Shown one piece after another: positions 15,713 to 23,006 of a DNA stretch of 64,000 nt. Origin of the DNA: Convolutriloba macropyga. Taxonomy: Eukaryota. The notes under the pieces are model-generated. The model did not search any database and was not told where the DNA came from. It saw nothing but the letters and a program-made list of their open reading frames with translations. Where the stretch lies: assembly GCF_964194025.1 (NCBI RefSeq), contig NC_134473.1:70866001-70930000 (forward strand), in the 5' to 3' direction. Each line of letters starts with the position of its first letter. The first letter of the stretch is position 1. Position numbers and translations under genes: made by a program.

Positions 15713-16227
15713 AAAAATATACACGAACAGTTGGAAATTTTGAAACTTTGTCCAGAGAGAGACTCACGAACACAAAATTTTTTAAGAATTTGAGGAGGAG
15801 AAGGAAACAGATCTCGATTAGGTTGTTTTTTATCTGTCACATTTTCAGTGTCCCTCATTTGTGCTCTGAACACTATCCCTCTCTCCTCTCATCACTCGTC
15901 TATAGTTGGACGCGTCATCCACTCTCTCATTGTTCATGTTGTATCCTAACATGTCTTTCTTACCATCTCCTTCTCCTTCCTTATTGCCCCCCTCCCTCTC
16001 CCCCTCTCCATCTCCATCTCCCTCGCCCTCCTCTTCGTCGTCGTTGTAGTCTTCCTCGTCAGCCTCCATGAAAGTGGGAAGACCACCCGCGGCAAGAGGG
16101 GCGAACAGGTTTCGTTACTCAACATCATTTCACACAAAAATATAATATATTCCTATATTTTTCTGTAGTTTTGATTTAGCCGGAAGTTAATGTAAGATTC
16201 AATCAGAAAAAAAAAGAATGTCAATCA

Positions 16228-16634
16228 TGTCGGTTAATGGGAACGCAGAGACAAATCTTGTAATCGAATAGTTAAATTAGAAATAATGGTTGACAACTGT
16301 GGCGATTAACACGAAATTCAGTCCATATTTATTACCCCAAATTACCGCACTTTTACATTCATGGTGATCACCTTTAATTTATAACTTCCTTGACTTCTTA
16401 TGACATCCGATCTTAACTAGTTATTTACTCTGATAATTTACTTCTCTAAAAGATCAAGGGTCATCATATCACACATAACAATATGAAAAGTTGGGGACAA
16501 ATCTAGTATAAATAGCACGTGTTAGCTCCTTGTTGCATTCACTCATTTCATAAATAACCAAGATATAAATCAGCACGTGGATGAGGTACGTATATCTTTC
16601 CATACTTTAAACAATTAACATTATACTTTCAACA
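16228..16634 (-). repeat. Copia 3' LTR (407 bp)
   Basis: TGTCGG...TTTCAACA on the + strand; identical to 21658-22064. Element-strand AATAAA at 16328-16333. Confidence 0.98.
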
Positions 16635-16644
16635 CTCCTCCTAT
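16635..16644 (-). promoter_or_regulatory. Polypurine tract (ATAGGAGGAG) abutting the 3' LTR
   Basis: + strand CTCCTCCTAT lies immediately inside the LTR end. Confidence 0.85.
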
Positions 16645-16648
16645 CATG

Positions 16649-19600
16649 TTAAGTGTTTGTTCCGAGAAGGACATCACGAAAAAGTGATACTTTGGTCCTC
16701 CCCAATGCTTTTGTAAGTGTGTCTGCCGGCATGCGATCGGTAGGTAAGTAGTTTAGCTCTAATAGTCGACTTTCGACTAAATTCCGAACGAAGTGCACTT
16801 TTAATGAAAAGTGCTTTGTCTTTCCGTGATTCATCGAATTTTTACTAAGAGCAATACAAGCTTGATTGTCTACAAAGACGTTTACTGGCTGCTGGATTTC
16901 TAAATCTAATTCTCGTAATAGGTTAACTAAATGTACTGCTTCTTTACTGGCCTCTACTACGGCGTTAAGCTCAGCCTCAGCTGTTGAAGTAGATACACAC
17001 TTTTGTAACTTGCTAGCCCAACTGATTGCACCTGAACTATTATTAAGTTTAAAACAAAAACCACTTGTACTTTTTCTATTGTCTATGTTGCCTGCCCAAT
17101 CTGAGTCTGAAAATCCTGTTAACTCCAGTTTCTCACTTTTTCTAAAAACCATCTTCTCTGATTTTGTACCTTTTAGGTAACGTAAACACCCTTTTGCCGC
17201 ATTCCAATGTCGCCTTCCAGGATTTTCAACAAACGAACTCAATAAATTGGCTGCGTGCGCAATATCTGGTCTACTTGTTAATGCCAAATAGTTCAAACAT
17301 CCCACTATACCCCTATAATCACACGATTGCTTTTCTCTATGCTCATTGCTGCCGATTTCTGGTGAATCTAATTTTGATAGTTTCAGGCTAACATCTAAAG
17401 GTGTTTCCAGTGTCTTTGTTTCGCTCATGTTAAATTTCTCAAGTAATTTTTCTACATATGCTTCTTGGCTTAGCATAATTTCGTTTTGTGTTCGCTCAAT
17501 TTTTATATTTAAGAACCAGCTAAGATCTCCATAACTGCTAATTTGAAATTGCTCACTAACTTTAGTTTTAAAGTTTTCACAAAAGTCTTCCTGCAATCCT
17601 AATATCACCATATCATCTACCCAAAGACACACTAATCCTTCTATACCATTTTCTCCTTTCTTTATGAAAAGACACTCATCTTGAATAGCCGGCGTGAAAC
17701 CTAATTGGTTGAGAAAAGTTTTGATTGTTAAGTACCAATTTCTACCGGACTGTTTCAAACCATATAAACTTTTCCTCAGCTTACAAATTAATGGATTTCC
17801 TTGCTTGTCAAACTTTTCAAACCCTTCGGGCTGTTGCATAAAGATTTCTTCTTCGATGTCAGCGTTTAAGTATGCTGTTTTGATATCCATTTGTTTTAAC
17901 TCGGTGTTTTTAAATACTGCGTAGCTTATCAGTACTCGAATTGTTGAGAGGCGTGTTGTTGGTGAGTAGGTTTCGTTGTAATCCCGACCTGGATCTTGGC
18001 TAAATCCTTTTGCTACGAATCTTGCCTTATACCTTGTTATCTCACCACTAGGACCAAACTTAAGAGCAAAGTGCCAGCGGCTACCAATGGGTTTATTTCC
18101 TTTGTTCTCTACCAGTTCCCAAACATTATTTTCCACTAATGAGTTGTATTCTAACTTCATTGCCTCGTACCAGTTTTTATCCCTAATTGCTTCATCAATG
18201 GACTTAGGTAGCAATTCGTTGTTAACAATTTCACCAAGGAAAGCTACCGGGTTTAAATCTCTATCACCATCTGAATGATGCTTGTTGACTATCTCCTCCT
18301 TCTTTTCTTTGACTTCAATAAACATTTCGTTTTCGTTGAAAGTTACATTGCGAGATTTTCTAACCTTAAAGACCCCTTTGTCATTTGGAGTACCTACCAG
18401 ATAAGTCTTACTATTGTCTGAAGACCCTAAGAATATTCCTTTTTGAGAAGTTCTATCAATCTTACCGCGAAAATTTTTTTCAACGTGAACGAAAGCTGAA
18501 CAACCAAACACTTTGATAGATTCTAAGTTAGGTTTCTTCTTGTACATTGCCTCAAAAGGTGTCTTCTGAATACCTGAATGGAAACAAAAATTTTTAATCT
18601 CACTTGCCATGTTAAGCGCATATGGCCAATACTCTTTTTCTAAACCTGACTGCTCTAAAAGACATCTAGCCATTGGGGTTATTGTCCCCCAATTCCTCTC
18701 AACCTTTCCGTTTTCTTGTGGTGTATACGGTGCCGAGAACTCAAGCCTAACGCCTTTTCGTCTACATAATTGTTTTATGTCATTTGACACATATTCCCCT
18801 GCACCGTCACAAACTAAGGTTCCTGGTTGTCCTATGTCTGCAAAGAACTGTTCAACTTTTTCAAAGGCCTCGTCCCTTGTCCTCAAAAAATATAGTTTCT
18901 GATATCTGCTAAAACTATCCACGAACCCTATTGCATACCTATGACCATCAACCGCTTCCGGTTGGATGGGCCCTAATATGTCGGTATGAACAATTTCTAA
19001 GACTTCACTTGCTCTTGTTTCTGAGTCTCTTGGTACTGGAAGTTTCTTTGATTTATTTAGCTGACATATTTCACAGTTTGCTAAATCATGCTCGTTTACT
19101 TTTAGCCCCACTGCGTGAACTTTTAATTTGTATATGTCCTCAACATTGTTATGACCCAAACGCTTATGCCACAAACTAAGGGGATCTCCATTTGCTAAGT
19201 TGCACTGCTCACCGTAATCAATGTTGTGCCAGATAAATAAACTATCTCTTTCCTCGAAAGGGAAAACTGTTCCGTTCTTGGTCCGTATTTCTAAAGTCAC
19301 ACCAAAGACGACCTCATTGCCTGTTGCTCTAAGTTTTGACACTGATATAAGATTCCTTGTGTTTTTGGGAACAAGCAACGCATTATTTAATCTTATTTTT
19401 CGCGCTAAACCATTGGAATCCAAAACCCTAATTTCAACTGTTCCTTTCCCACTAATTGAACTTTTACTGTTGTTTGCATTAGTGATGGTACCAGAATACT
19501 CCTTGTCTATATCTATGAATAAACTTTCATCTCTAATCATATGACTGGTAGCACCTGAGTCTAAAACTAGCTCATTTGCAAGGTTGTTTTCCGACGTTTG

Positions 19601-20521
19601 AAAGAAGGAAAAGATCTCTTCTTCTTCTTCTTCTTCTAAATTCTGCTCCTCAACTAAATTTTGCGTGCCCCTCTGGTTGGTTCTCCTGCTTTGACTTACA
19701 AACCTTTTCTCATATTTCTGTTGTTTTCCACAAAATTTAGCTATATGTCCGTGCTCACCACACTTAAAACATTTCATTTGAGAAGCTTTGGTTTGTTCAG
19801 GAATCGTTTTCTTAAACCTACATTCTTTTGCGATATGTCCCATTTTCTGGCAGTTGAAACATTTCCGTTCCTTATTAAAGAATACGCTCTCTGTTTTGGT
19901 TTTTACATTTTCATTATCGAAGTTTATCAGGTCTCGTTTTATTTCCTCTAGAGTTTTCTCGTCTTTGCTGTATTTCACGAGTGTTGCGAAATTTTCATAT
20001 TCCTTCGGGAGCCCTTTTAGAATTATTGAGACAAACATTTGTTCACTAATTCCTTCATTCACTAGTGTTAAGTTGTATTGCATATCATCTGCTCTGGTTA
20101 GATAATCTACTATACTCTCACTTGAAGTCTTCCTAAGGCTAGTTAATTGCGCTATCAATTTGTGTAGCTGGGGTCTCTCAAAACTTTTGAAGCGTTTACA
20201 CAGTACATCCCAAGCTCTGGTGCCATCACCCTTATGTGGTCTAAGAAAAAGAACTGATGTTTTGTCTAAAGCCTGAACCAACTCGTACCACAATGTCTTC
20301 TTTTTCTCTTCTAATTCTTCCCTCCCCTTTTCTATAGCTTGCCTACGTTGCTCCTCCGAAGAATTATTTCTAACAGCTTGCACATAATCTAGATAGGTGG
20401 CTTCTCCACTAAGAACTTTACCAAGTTTTAAAGAGTGCATACGAGCCTCAAACTGTTCAGCAAAATACAAGAAATCATCTTCACGCCCGCTGAATACCAA
20501 TCTTTCTAATTTTGAGCTCAT
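16649..20521 (-). CDS. Copia Gag-Pol polyprotein, 1290 aa
   Basis: Two CCHC knuckles (CFNCQKMGHIAKEC, CFKCGEHGHIAKFC); protease LDSGATSHM; WHKRLGH..CEIC; integrase HTD..CDGAGEY..ENGKVER; RT KSLYGLKQS, WVDD; RNase H DSDWAG, TAEAE, DNQA, ADTLTK. Confidence 0.99.
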   Translation of the reverse strand: MSSKLERLVFSGREDDFLYFAEQFEARMHSLKLGKVLSGEATYLDYVQAVRNNSSEEQRRQAIEKGREELEEKKKTLWYELVQALDKTSVLFLRPHKGDGTRAWDVLCKRFKSFERPQLHKLIAQLTSLRKTSSESIVDYLTRADDMQYNLTLVNEGISEQMFVSIILKGLPKEYENFATLVKYSKDEKTLEEIKRDLINFDNENVKTKTESVFFNKERKCFNCQKMGHIAKECRFKKTIPEQTKASQMKCFKCGEHGHIAKFCGKQQKYEKRFVSQSRRTNQRGTQNLVEEQNLEEEEEEEIFSFFQTSENNLANELVLDSGATSHMIRDESLFIDIDKEYSGTITNANNSKSSISGKGTVEIRVLDSNGLARKIRLNNALLVPKNTRNLISVSKLRATGNEVVFGVTLEIRTKNGTVFPFEERDSLFIWHNIDYGEQCNLANGDPLSLWHKRLGHNNVEDIYKLKVHAVGLKVNEHDLANCEICQLNKSKKLPVPRDSETRASEVLEIVHTDILGPIQPEAVDGHRYAIGFVDSFSRYQKLYFLRTRDEAFEKVEQFFADIGQPGTLVCDGAGEYVSNDIKQLCRRKGVRLEFSAPYTPQENGKVERNWGTITPMARCLLEQSGLEKEYWPYALNMASEIKNFCFHSGIQKTPFEAMYKKKPNLESIKVFGCSAFVHVEKNFRGKIDRTSQKGIFLGSSDNSKTYLVGTPNDKGVFKVRKSRNVTFNENEMFIEVKEKKEEIVNKHHSDGDRDLNPVAFLGEIVNNELLPKSIDEAIRDKNWYEAMKLEYNSLVENNVWELVENKGNKPIGSRWHFALKFGPSGEITRYKARFVAKGFSQDPGRDYNETYSPTTRLSTIRVLISYAVFKNTELKQMDIKTAYLNADIEEEIFMQQPEGFEKFDKQGNPLICKLRKSLYGLKQSGRNWYLTIKTFLNQLGFTPAIQDECLFIKKGENGIEGLVCLWVDDMVILGLQEDFCENFKTKVSEQFQISSYGDLSWFLNIKIERTQNEIMLSQEAYVEKLLEKFNMSETKTLETPLDVSLKLSKLDSPEIGSNEHREKQSCDYRGIVGCLNYLALTSRPDIAHAANLLSSFVENPGRRHWNAAKGCLRYLKGTKSEKMVFRKSEKLELTGFSDSDWAGNIDNRKSTSGFCFKLNNSSGAISWASKLQKCVSTSTAEAELNAVVEASKEAVHLVNLLRELDLEIQQPVNVFVDNQACIALSKNSMNHGKTKHFSLKVHFVRNLVESRLLELNYLPTDRMPADTLTKALGRTKVSLFRDVLLGTNT

Positions 20522-21302
20522 TGTTAGGCCTGTCTTACTTTCGTTTATTTTCCGTTCGTCTCAAATTAACACTTTAGCTTTAATTGTTCCCTACCGAAAC
20601 AAAGACTATGTCCTTTGTTTTTCTAAGCTATTACTGCTCTAGGTAAATATTCTTTTGTAACAAGGGTCGGGCTGTGAAAAATCTTGTTCGGACTTAGATC
20701 AAAACTGCTTTCCTTTCTACGCGTGTTTGAATCTGTTGCCTGTTGGTGGCTGTGTTATAGGGCGACGAAGCGGTGAGTCGTTATGTTTGTGTATCAAAAA
20801 AATGCTTTATAGCACCAGGTTAGCACTTGTTGTAATATGGTAGCACTTGTAAGAAAAAAAACACTAAGCAAAAAGAGTTTGGTCGACTAAATTAATCTAG
20901 AAGTTGGTGTTCTGTTCGAGTTCTGTAATATCCTTGACAAAATCGAAAGCAGGACATTGACATTGAGCCAGGGTTTTTCTTCCGCGATTAAGCACGATGA
21001 GGATACCAACACCCTCCGAGGATAATGTACTCGAACCCTAATCCTAGTCCTATTTAAGAAATGTTTTACCACCAACTTTTGTGTCTTTCGACCAAACTTG
21101 TATCTTACAGAAGCACAGCACACACAATTGAAAATGAAACAGTTGTTTAAGCTGAGCTGTTCTCAGCTATACTAAGCAATCCTGGTTCCCCGACAGCTCT
21201 GTTATACAATTGAACCTCCGCGCTCCTTTTTGATTCCCCACAACAGCTCCACTCACTCTTCTTCACAAGCAGAATCCACTGCTTAGCTACACACACTTAG
21301 CA

Positions 21303-21466
21303 CTCCACGATTGAAGTCCCCCGACCAGGTACACAAGCTCTCGACTCAACAGATGAAGTCCCCCAACCACTTACAAAAGCTTTCAACTCCACAATTGAAG
21401 TCCCCCAACCAGTCACACAAGCTTTCAACTCCACAACTGAGGTCCCCCAACCAGTTACACAAGCTT
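21303..21466. repeat. About 4 x 42-bp tandem repeat in the copia 5' leader
   Basis: Unit ~CTCCACAATTGAAGTCCCCCAACCAGTCACACAAGCTTTCAA, with imperfect copies. Confidence 0.9.
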
Positions 21467-21643
21467 CTTACTCTTGCTTCTTCTGGTCTCACTTGGCCAC
21501 TTCTTGACTACAAGGCTTGTCTCTCCTTGTCTTCTCTGTCTTCCTCCCCCAGTGATTTCAGCGATCCTCCTATGTAGCAAAGAGGCGCAGCAACAACGTT
21601 TTTCTATTTACGATGGGGGTTGATTACTTAACTTAGAAAAGCT

Positions 21644-21657
21644 CTGGGCCCATAACC
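21644..21657 (-). promoter_or_regulatory. Primer-binding site GGTTATGGGCCCAG (tRNAiMet nt 26-39, half-tRNA priming)
   Basis: Directly abuts the 5' LTR. Complementary to CUGGGCCCAUAACC of animal initiator tRNA-Met, as in Drosophila copia. Confidence 0.93.
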
Positions 21658-22064
21658 TGTCGGTTAATGGGAACGCAGAGACAAATCTTGTAATCGAATA
21701 GTTAAATTAGAAATAATGGTTGACAACTGTGGCGATTAACACGAAATTCAGTCCATATTTATTACCCCAAATTACCGCACTTTTACATTCATGGTGATCA
21801 CCTTTAATTTATAACTTCCTTGACTTCTTATGACATCCGATCTTAACTAGTTATTTACTCTGATAATTTACTTCTCTAAAAGATCAAGGGTCATCATATC
21901 ACACATAACAATATGAAAAGTTGGGGACAAATCTAGTATAAATAGCACGTGTTAGCTCCTTGTTGCATTCACTCATTTCATAAATAACCAAGATATAAAT
22001 CAGCACGTGGATGAGGTACGTATATCTTTCCATACTTTAAACAATTAACATTATACTTTCAACA
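21658..22064 (-). repeat. Copia 5' LTR (407 bp) with TATA-like TATAAA (21808-21813) and two CACGTG E-boxes (21946, 22004)
   Basis: Identical to 16228-16634. Motifs read directly from the sequence; their function is inferred. Confidence 0.97.
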
Positions 22065-23006
22065 AATCAGAATGTTTTTTCTTCAGAAAGACCATTGCCT
22101 TGCCATTGCTTTTGATTTAAGGTGGTTTATGAGTTTATGCCATTGCTATAGAGAGAGATGCACCTGAGATTTAGACGCTGGTTAGGGGCAGAGAAGGCGG
22201 ACTTATCTATCCAGAGACAAAAATAAATTTGACCCATTCCAGAGAATAAATGCTTAACGACAAAAACACCGAATGAATAATTTCAAAATGTTTCTAAATT
22301 TAGGCATTTAACAGTTTCTAAGAACTAGTTGCTCACATTTTTGTAAAAAGAGAATTAAAAATACAGAAATGTATGTTATTAGAAACTTTTTGTCTGTAAA
22401 TTGTCAGACAAGTAGCATCCAGGTTGATTTGGTAACTATAGACTCTATCAATTTTATTATGAATAAAACATTTGAAACAACCCCTAAACAAAGTTTAATA
22501 AAAAAAAATCACTGAAAAATTTAGGCAGAATCTAAGTGCTTCCAAAATAATAATTCCTGTTGTCAATAATTTAACATACAATTTTCTAGCCTTTTGTTTC
22601 ATCCGATTGGTTTAAGTTCCTAAATGCTTCAAGACGAAAACTTTAAAACCGAAAAAATTTTCTGCCTGAATTCTAAAAAGATTTAATATCCAAACGACAG
22701 CATATGATATAATAATACTCTACACAAAAAAATTGTTTGTCTCAAAAAGATATGCAGCTACGAAGATCACTCAGCTTTATCTACTGAATTTGACAAAAAA
22801 CGGACTCAGCAGTTGAGCAACAATAAATTCAACAATTTTTCAAAAAGTTGCTTTGCAGAGACAAGAAACTAAAACTTACCAAAAATTAACTAATCAGGAA
22901 ACAATTGTTTCTTTCTCACAGAATGAAGGTATTAATTGATCAGCGTAGATGAAATATAAGGTATACCTTAAAAACAATATAAAAAATTTGAAGGCCAGAT
23001 GAAAAA

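What the first reader, a model, noticed from the sequence alone, without database searches (positions are those of the whole stretch)
21576..21657. Split primer-binding structure that could anneal nearly the whole 39-nt half-tRNAiMet
Seen: the PBS (21644-21657) matches tRNAiMet nt 26-39. At 21576-21599 the + strand reads AGCAAAGAGGCGCAGCAACAACGT, against tRNA nt 1-24 AGCAGAGUGGCGCAGCGGAAGCGU: 18 identities, four A-for-G changes that become G:U pairs in the element RNA, and two mismatches. The spacer between the two sites is closed by a 7-bp stem (TTTTCTA 21600-21606 / TAGAAAA 21634-21640) that starts exactly where the second site ends. Known: Drosophila copia primes with a 39-nt 5' tRNAiMet fragment, and extra primer-template contacts exist in yeast Ty elements. 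Inference: a three-way junction that unfolds and captures the tRNA 5' half and may expose the cleavage site.
Basis: partly seen in the sequence, partly recalled or inferred. Interest (0 to 1): 0.75.

Follow-up and report, generated by a model that had tools for sequence, protein, structure and literature searches.

The report
Second tRNA-pairing site in a copia element
A young, intact copia-type jumping gene has, 44 bases past its normal primer site, a second stretch that can pair with the rest of the half-tRNA it uses to start copying itself. The match is far beyond chance, but whether it works or is a leftover stays open.

Summary
The sequence facts hold. The element is an intact Ty1/copia retrotransposon on the minus strand (16228-22064), with identical 407-nt LTRs and the target-site duplication TGATT. 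Its 14-nt PBS abuts U5 and is complementary to host tRNAiMet nt 26-39.

The second site (21576-21599) lies 44 nt downstream and is complementary to nt 1-24. The true count is therefore 16 Watson-Crick pairs, 5 G:U pairs and 3 mismatches, not 18/4/2.

The duplex is -31.7 kcal/mol. No shuffle reached this (0 of 3000 local, 0 of 2280 element-wide), and it is the best site in the whole 5.8-kb RNA. Co-folding with the 39-nt half gives the proposed two-site pairing as the minimum-energy structure.

The 7-bp stem exists but is weak (-0.8 kcal/mol), is not in the minimum-energy fold, and is broken in an older subfamily.

The second site is confined to this family (about 70-120 copies). About nine other half-tRNA families in the genome lack it. 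The closest family (Gag 61% identical) shows only weak colinear fragments. Variation among copies gives no clear sign of extra constraint.

Best reading (about 45%): a family-specific accessory primer contact, like the Ty1 boxes. Main rival (about 33%): a non-functional tRNA-derived relic. I found no support for the idea that it exposes the tRNA cleavage site.

The parts
21658..22064 (-). 5' LTR (407 nt, TG...CA), ending in U5
   Evidence: Identical to the 3' LTR over 407 nt. Flanked by the target-site duplication TGATT at 22065-22069.
21644..21657 (-). Primer-binding site GGTTATGGGCCCAG, complementary to host tRNAiMet nt 26-39 (anticodon stem-loop)
   Evidence: 14/14 match to host tRNA genes. 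It abuts the LTR's terminal CA. Invariant in 29 fetched copies.
21600..21643 (-). 44-nt spacer. Inverted-repeat arms at 21634-21640 (RNA 5' arm UUUUCUA) and 21600-21606 (RNA 3' arm UAGAAAA), with a 27-nt loop
   Evidence: Exact 7-bp inverted repeat. -0.8 kcal/mol alone; not in the minimum-energy fold; broken in the older subfamily.
21576..21599 (-). Second site ACGTTGTTGCTGCGCCTCTTTGCT, complementary to host tRNAiMet nt 24-1 (16 WC + 5 G:U + 3 mismatches)
   Evidence: Duplex of -31.7 kcal/mol; 0/3000 and 0/2280 shuffles reach it; best site in the whole element RNA. 53 exact genomic copies; 72 copies of a 35-nt pattern spanning the 3' arm and the site with at most 3 mismatches.
21658..21672 (-). 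3' end of U5, CCCATTAACCGACA. It repeats the tRNA anticodon-loop strand and pairs with the PBS in the free RNA
   Evidence: This hairpin is in the minimum-energy and centroid folds of the free leader. Similar CCATAACC motifs occur at the U5 end of several other families.
21302..21466 (-). 42-nt tandem repeat (3.9 copies) inside the roughly 1.1-kb untranslated leader
16649..20521 (-). Uninterrupted 1290-aa gag-pol ORF (gag, zinc knuckle, protease region, integrase, RVT_2)
16635..16645 (-). Polypurine tract GATAGGAGGAG, directly upstream of the 3' LTR
16228..16634 (-). 3' LTR, followed by the target-site duplication TGATT (16223-16227)

Best explanation
The second site is an accessory primer contact, making a split (bipartite) primer-binding site that is specific to this copia family.

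Shown: the element carries a copia/Ty5-type PBS for the 3' end of a 39-nt 5' fragment of tRNAiMet. It also carries, 44 nt downstream, a 24-nt stretch that can pair with the fragment's remaining 5' part (the acceptor 5' strand and the D arm). Together the two duplexes cover 35 of the 39 nt.

Inferred: once the 14-bp PBS duplex forms, the tethered 5' part of the primer only has to open its 4-bp D stem to zip onto the second site. This adds about -30 kcal/mol, loops out the spacer (which may fold into a weak hairpin), and so stabilises or selects the primer on the template before minus-strand synthesis starts towards U5. This is the same logic as boxes 0/1/2.1 of yeast Ty1 and the split PBS of Ty3, applied to a half-tRNA primer.
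For: - The complementarity is far beyond chance and is the single best tRNA nt 1-25 target in the 5.8-kb RNA; it sits next to the PBS and in colinear order.
- The minimum-energy co-fold with the host 39-mer is exactly PBS plus second site.
- Five of the eight departures from perfect complementarity are C-to-U, which keep a G:U pair.
- The site best fits the C16/U24 tRNAiMet gene variant.
- Primer read-through, the obvious accidental source, leaves no trace elsewhere. Among more than 200 PBS-bearing insertions, none has the D-arm complement within 32 nt of the PBS, apart from one spacer-deleted copy of this family.
- From general knowledge of eukaryotic initiator tRNAs, not tested in this host: m1G9 and a modified G26 should stop reverse transcriptase before nt 1-8.
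- In 29 young copies the site is among the least variable 24-nt windows, together with the PBS (2/24 variable sites against 34% elsewhere).
- The nearest family (Gag 61% identical) has weak colinear pieces ACGC, GCUGC and UUCUGC right after its PBS (P about 0.009 uncorrected).
- Precedent: extended primer contacts in Ty1 (PMC3592414) and Ty3 (PMC5371799).
Against: - About nine other families in the same genome use the same PBS without any second site, so it is not needed for half-tRNA priming.
- The site fits the host tRNA slightly worse than the canonical animal sequence at nt 6-7.
- Genome-wide it is not better kept than neighbouring leader sequence. Exact 24-mer counts are 53 (site), 47 (spacer) and 80 (a control 130 nt downstream of the PBS).
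- The sliding-window rank of its low variation is only 4.5%.
- Variants in older copies include many pair-breaking changes.
- Because the tRNA partner is fixed, no covariation test is possible.
- The stem is marginal and not conserved between subfamilies.
- An RNA:RNA duplex of 24 nt would also have to be displaced late in minus-strand synthesis, which is a cost.
Confidence: 0.45

Rival explanations
1. Non-functional relic. A piece of tRNAiMet complement entered the leader once in the ancestor of this family, by plus-strand synthesis running on into the primer or by recombination with tRNA-derived cDNA. It was later separated from the PBS by an insertion. It is still recognisable only because the family is young. 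It may pair with the primer in particles, but this has no consequence.
For: - Its orientation (tRNA complement on the sense strand, colinear with the PBS) is what read-through into the primer would give.
- It is confined to one family and its older subfamilies.
- It is no more conserved than nearby leader blocks.
- The C-to-T bias of the changes also fits plain deamination (11 C against 5 G in the perfect complement; 5 of 5 has P about 0.15).
- Old copies decay freely.
Against: - It needs an extra 44-nt insertion exactly between the two halves.
- No contiguous read-through product exists among more than 200 PBS-bearing insertions.
- Read-through past the expected modified G26 and m1G9 is unlikely (general knowledge, untested here).
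- The nearest family, whose leader is otherwise unalignable, still shows colinear fragments.
Confidence: 0.33
2. The stretch serves another RNA role, such as an intramolecular hairpin, packaging or dimerisation, and the tRNA complementarity is secondary. In the free leader, GCGCCUCUU pairs with AGGAGGAUCGC just downstream.
For: The minimum-energy and centroid folds of the free leader put the site in a local hairpin with the following purine run. The purine-rich block downstream is the best conserved part of the leader.
Against: The free-RNA fold is not unusual (z -1.9). This does not explain a 24-nt colinear match to the tRNA that no shuffle reproduces.
Confidence: 0.08
3. The site is a target. 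Host 5' tRNAiMet fragments (5' halves or tRFs) pair with it to repress the element, by analogy with 3'-tRFs that target PBSs.
For: Only the complementarity itself. tRF-based control of LTR elements is known for 3'-tRFs (PMC7472051, from its abstract).
Against: A repressive site should be lost, not kept, in one of the largest coding families with this PBS seen here (about 117 copies, many 97-100% identical). No data on small RNAs.
Confidence: 0.06
4. Chance resemblance.
For: None beyond the post-hoc nature of the find.
Against: 0/3000 and 0/2280 shuffles reach it. It is the best site in the element, adjacent to the PBS and colinear with it.
Confidence: 0.02

Closest known systems
Half-tRNA priming of Hemivirus-type Ty1/copia elements (Drosophila copia and 1731, yeast Ty5, Volvox Osser)
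   Same: The PBS next to U5 is complementary to the anticodon stem-loop of tRNAiMet and ends at nt 39. This implies a 5' tRNA fragment as primer (PMC1181622, PMC10886601, PMC5371799). The gene order is gag-PR-IN-RT and the target-site duplication is 5 bp.
   Different: In the papers I could read, nothing describes a second template site for nt 1-24 of the fragment. I could not read the primary papers (Kikuchi 1986; Ke 1999) or the sequences of those elements here, so absence in them is untested.
Extended PBS of yeast Ty1 (boxes 0, 1 and 2.1 pairing with the T and D arms of full-length tRNAiMet)
   Same: Extra short complementarities lie within a few tens of nt downstream of a short PBS, in a copia-superfamily element. 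They are thought to position the primer (PMC3592414).
   Different: Ty1 uses the 3' end of the whole tRNA and three boxes of 6-7 nt; box 2.1 was not confirmed in particles. Here a single, almost continuous 24-nt site covers the acceptor 5' strand plus the D arm of a cleaved tRNA.
Bipartite PBS of yeast Ty3, and the U5/PAS-type contacts of retroviruses
   Same: The primer tRNA is held by two separate template segments (PMC5371799).
   Different: In Ty3 the second segment is about 4.8 kb away in U3 and pairs with the T and D arms. In retroviruses the extra contacts are short and mostly upstream in U5.

Membership tests
Ty1/copia LTR retrotransposon | Paired LTRs ending TG...CA, a 5-bp target-site duplication, and a PBS and PPT at the inner LTR borders | tested here: met
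   407-nt identical LTRs, TSD TGATT, PBS at 21644-21657, PPT at 16635-16645.
Ty1/copia LTR retrotransposon | Domain order gag, protease, integrase, then RT (integrase before RT) | tested here: met
   Pfam hits: Retrotran_gag_2 (aa 45-207), zf-CCHC, gag_pre-integrs, rve (507-601), RVT_2 (798-1042) in one 1290-aa ORF.
Half-tRNAiMet-primed (Hemivirus-type) copia | PBS complementary to the tRNAiMet anticodon stem-loop, ending at nt 39 and directly after U5 | tested here: met
   14/14 match to host tRNAiMet nt 26-39. Complementarity stops at nt 39/40.
Half-tRNAiMet-primed (Hemivirus-type) copia | A 39-nt tRNA fragment is physically joined to strong-stop cDNA in particles | not testable with these tools
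   Needs cDNA or small-RNA data from the host.
Extended / bipartite PBS (Ty1 boxes, Ty3) | Extra template complementarity to the primer outside the PBS, beyond chance | tested here: met
   -31.7 kcal/mol; 0/3000 and 0/2280 shuffles.
Extended / bipartite PBS (Ty1 boxes, Ty3) | Conservation of the extra contact among related active elements | tested here: inconclusive
   Kept in the family's subfamilies. Weak fragments in the nearest family (P about 0.009 uncorrected). Absent in about nine other families with the same PBS.
Extended / bipartite PBS (Ty1 boxes, Ty3) | Required for initiation of reverse transcription | not testable with these tools
   Needs mutagenesis and cDNA assays.

The most novel reading that the evidence does not exclude
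The element RNA acts as a clamp for the whole 5' half of tRNAiMet. The split PBS and the looped-out spacer form a three-way junction that selects the tRNA and helps define or present the 39/40 cleavage that creates the primer, so the template takes part in making its own primer. This would give a sequence-level handle on the long-open question of how copia-type half-tRNA primers are generated.
Probability: 0.1. Interest if true: 0.7.

Novelty: new variant of a known kind. Interest (0 to 1): 0.42.

Why it matters
How half-tRNA primers are chosen, held and produced by copia/Ty5-type elements is poorly understood. Extended primer contacts have been shown only for elements that use whole tRNAs. 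If this second site works, it would be the first extended contact for a cleaved primer. It would also be a natural construct for testing: a young, apparently intact family whose sister families have the same PBS without the site. If it is a relic, it records tRNA sequence entering a retroelement leader. Either way it is one lineage-specific feature, not a general rule for half-tRNA priming.

Tried and rejected
1. Complementarity of the U5 end to tRNA nt 44-60 (12 of 16 by eye) is not significant (z -0.7). Rejected, and with it any template-guided bulge at the cleavage site.

2. A 12-bp match to the T arm at element nt about 1346 has a family-wise P of about 0.49. Rejected.

3. Second sites in other families:
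- An ungapped scan and a duplex-energy scan gave nothing for the TRIM-like arrays and for L045, L047, L049, L050/57/59/62 and L052/55.
- The L053 signal equals that of a reversed-tRNA decoy, so it is non-specific.

4. Purifying selection judged from copy variation is suggestive in 29 copies but is not borne out by genome-wide 24-mer counts.

6. A search for contiguous read-through products found one spacer-deleted copy only.

7. An Rfam scan of the leader found nothing. ARAGORN found no tRNA gene in the window.

8. The papers of Ke 1999 and Friant 1996 are not held.

9. Limits and housekeeping:
I therefore fetched no further copies and could not build a subfamily tree.
- A majority-rule column reference made, only to count variants in a 1.7-kb non-coding stretch, was deleted and is not reported.
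- The first duplex script timed out.

Full report
**What is there**

The finding lies in the leader of an LTR retrotransposon on the minus strand.
- Two 407-nt LTRs (21658-22064 and 16228-16634) are identical. They start TG and end CA, and are flanked by the 5-bp duplication TGATT.
- Between them lie a leader of about 1.1 kb holding a 42-nt tandem repeat, and one open 1290-aa gag-pol frame. Its Pfam domains run in copia order: gag, zinc knuckle, integrase, RVT_2.
- A polypurine tract sits before the 3' LTR.
- The copy looks young and intact. At least 40 other copies are 97-100% identical over the 361-nt query that spans the site, and about 117 copies hold the PBS region.

**The observation**

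On the element strand the LTR's final CA is followed at once by GGTTATGGGCCCAG, then by a 44-nt spacer, then by ACGTTGTTGCTGCGCCTCTTTGCT.

I took the host's own tRNAiMet from the genome. A pattern that leaves nt 5-8 free finds 103 genes or gene-like copies, many in tandem arrays, and 95 of the 100 listed read AGCAGGAT at nt 1-8.

The PBS matches nt 26-39 at 14 of 14 positions. The second site pairs with nt 24-1 through 16 Watson-Crick pairs and 5 G:U pairs, with 3 mismatches at tRNA nt 7, 8 and 19.

**Is it more than chance?**

Yes.
- The duplex of tRNA nt 1-25 with the site is -31.7 kcal/mol.
- Shuffles of the sequence after the PBS give -17.4 +/- 3.0, and none of 3000 reaches it.
- None of 2280 shuffled 200-nt windows from the whole element reaches it.
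- In the real 5.8-kb RNA the next best site is -22.1.
- The best site in the element is therefore the one next to the PBS, in colinear order.

**Structure**

Alone, the leader folds with the PBS sequestered by the U5 end (CCCAUUAACC pairs with GGUUAUGGG) and with the second site in a local hairpin (z -1.9, unremarkable).

With the host 39-mer, the minimum-energy dimer pairs the PBS with nt 26-39 and the second site with nt 1-24. It is 5.8 kcal/mol better than the separately folded RNAs.

- It is worth -0.8 kcal/mol alone and is not in the minimum-energy fold.
- In the complex, a fold that enforces it is only 0.2 kcal/mol worse.
- A perfect stem of 7 bp or more occurs in 3.1% of shuffled spacers, and an end-closing one in 0.14%.
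- In an older subfamily the 3' arm reads TAAAAAA, which breaks the only C-G pair.

A three-way junction is therefore allowed but not demonstrated.

**Relatives**

The genome holds about 106 further insertions with the same PBS. They fall into roughly ten families, some TRIM-like and in tandem arrays.
- Only this family and its older subfamilies have a significant second site.
- By Gag similarity the nearest family is L041 (61% identity) and then L053 (43%).
- L041 has the colinear pieces ACGC, GCUGC and UUCUGC starting 4 nt after its PBS (-22.1 kcal/mol; 26/3000 shuffles, not corrected for 13 tests).
- The L053 signal is matched by a reversed-tRNA decoy.
- The leaders of these families are otherwise unalignable.

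This is at best a hint of an older feature.

**Constraint within the family**

In 29 fetched copies the site has 2 variable positions of 24 and the PBS has 0 of 14, against 34% of positions elsewhere in the 360-nt region. As a sliding window, however, this ranks only in the lowest 4.5%.

Genome-wide, the exact 24-mer of the site occurs 53 times, a spacer 24-mer 47 times, and a control 130 nt downstream of the PBS 80 times.

Seventy-two copies keep the 3' arm plus site with at most 3 mismatches. Their variants include both pair-keeping changes (C to T opposite G9, G12 and G23; A to G opposite U24) and many pair-breaking ones.

So there is no clear sign of extra purifying selection. Covariation cannot be tested because the tRNA partner is fixed.

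**Origin**

The orientation is what plus-strand synthesis running on into the primer would produce, but that would give a contiguous extension of the PBS.
- A search for the PBS followed within 32 nt by the D-arm complement found only one hit. It is a copy of this same family that has lost the spacer and carries no tRNA-specific bases at the junction.
- From general knowledge of eukaryotic initiator tRNAs, not tested in this host, a modified G26 and m1G9 should stop reverse transcriptase. This fits the PBS ending exactly before G25 (linear numbering; standard position 26). It also argues against copying of nt 1-8.
- At nt 6-7 the site fits the canonical animal tRNAiMet better than the host's. 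This could point to an older or foreign origin, but it rests on two positions.

**Other leads checked and dropped**

The U5 end is not significantly complementary to tRNA nt 40-72. A 12-bp T-arm match near the start of gag is not significant. Nothing here therefore supports template-guided exposure of the 39/40 cleavage site. Rfam finds nothing in the leader.

**Comparison with what is known**

The element qualifies as a half-tRNAiMet-primed (Hemivirus-type) copia, like copia, 1731, Ty5 and Osser (PMC1181622, PMC10886601).

Extra primer contacts are established for Ty1 (boxes 0, 1 and 2.1; PMC3592414), Ty3 (split PBS; PMC5371799) and retroviruses. All of these use whole tRNAs.

I found no report of a second site for the 5' part of a half-tRNA.

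**Verdict**

The second site is real, non-random and tRNA-complementary, and it would almost certainly pair with a tethered half-tRNA.
- My best reading is a family-specific accessory primer contact (0.45).
- A non-functional tRNA-derived relic is nearly as likely (0.33).
- The stem and junction are optional decoration on present evidence.

It is a new variant of a known kind and of moderate interest.

**Limits**

Noticed in passing
window 21644-21672 (-); also L050, L057, L059, L062, L045, L053, L055, L069 just upstream of their PBS: The last bases of U5 (CCCAT(T)AACC) repeat the tRNA anticodon-loop strand. They can therefore form a hairpin of about 9 bp with the PBS in the free RNA. The motif recurs in several otherwise different copia families, but not in L041 or the TRIM-like ones.
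   Followed up: partly
L041 family, e.g. G000:C1:1084087 and 34 other places: In the nearest sister family, 32 of the 35 listed copies carry GTG or CTG in place of the GGG of the PBS core (mostly GTGCCC), which is one mismatch to tRNAiMet. Only two have the perfect GGGCCC. This looks like a template-inherited PBS variant that is occasionally corrected from the primer.
   Followed up: no
G000:C5:55029132-55029164 (-): One copy of the family has the whole spacer deleted, so the PBS is followed after 4-5 bases by the second site. It lies 5.7 kb from another copy of the older subfamily.
   Followed up: no
L042, L043, L051, L056 and others; L061-L068: Short non-coding LTR-like units have the same half-tRNA PBS, a PPT about 95 nt later, and a tRNA-like T arm (GGTTCAAATCC) in the repeat. 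They often sit in tandem arrays about 383 bp or about 310-940 bp apart.
   Followed up: partly
G000 C13:12.52-12.58 Mb, C7:7.43 Mb, C13:37.7 Mb: tRNAiMet genes occur in large tandem arrays that differ at D-loop position 16 (A, C or T). A G16/C24 variant is dispersed, often as inverted pairs 3-16 kb apart.
   Followed up: no
window 21302-21466 and about 21490-21550 (-): The untranslated leader is unusually long (about 1.1 kb). It has a 42-nt repeat (3.9 copies) and a purine-rich block about 95-170 nt after the PBS. That block is better kept between subfamilies than the second site (80 exact genomic copies of one 24-mer).
   Followed up: partly
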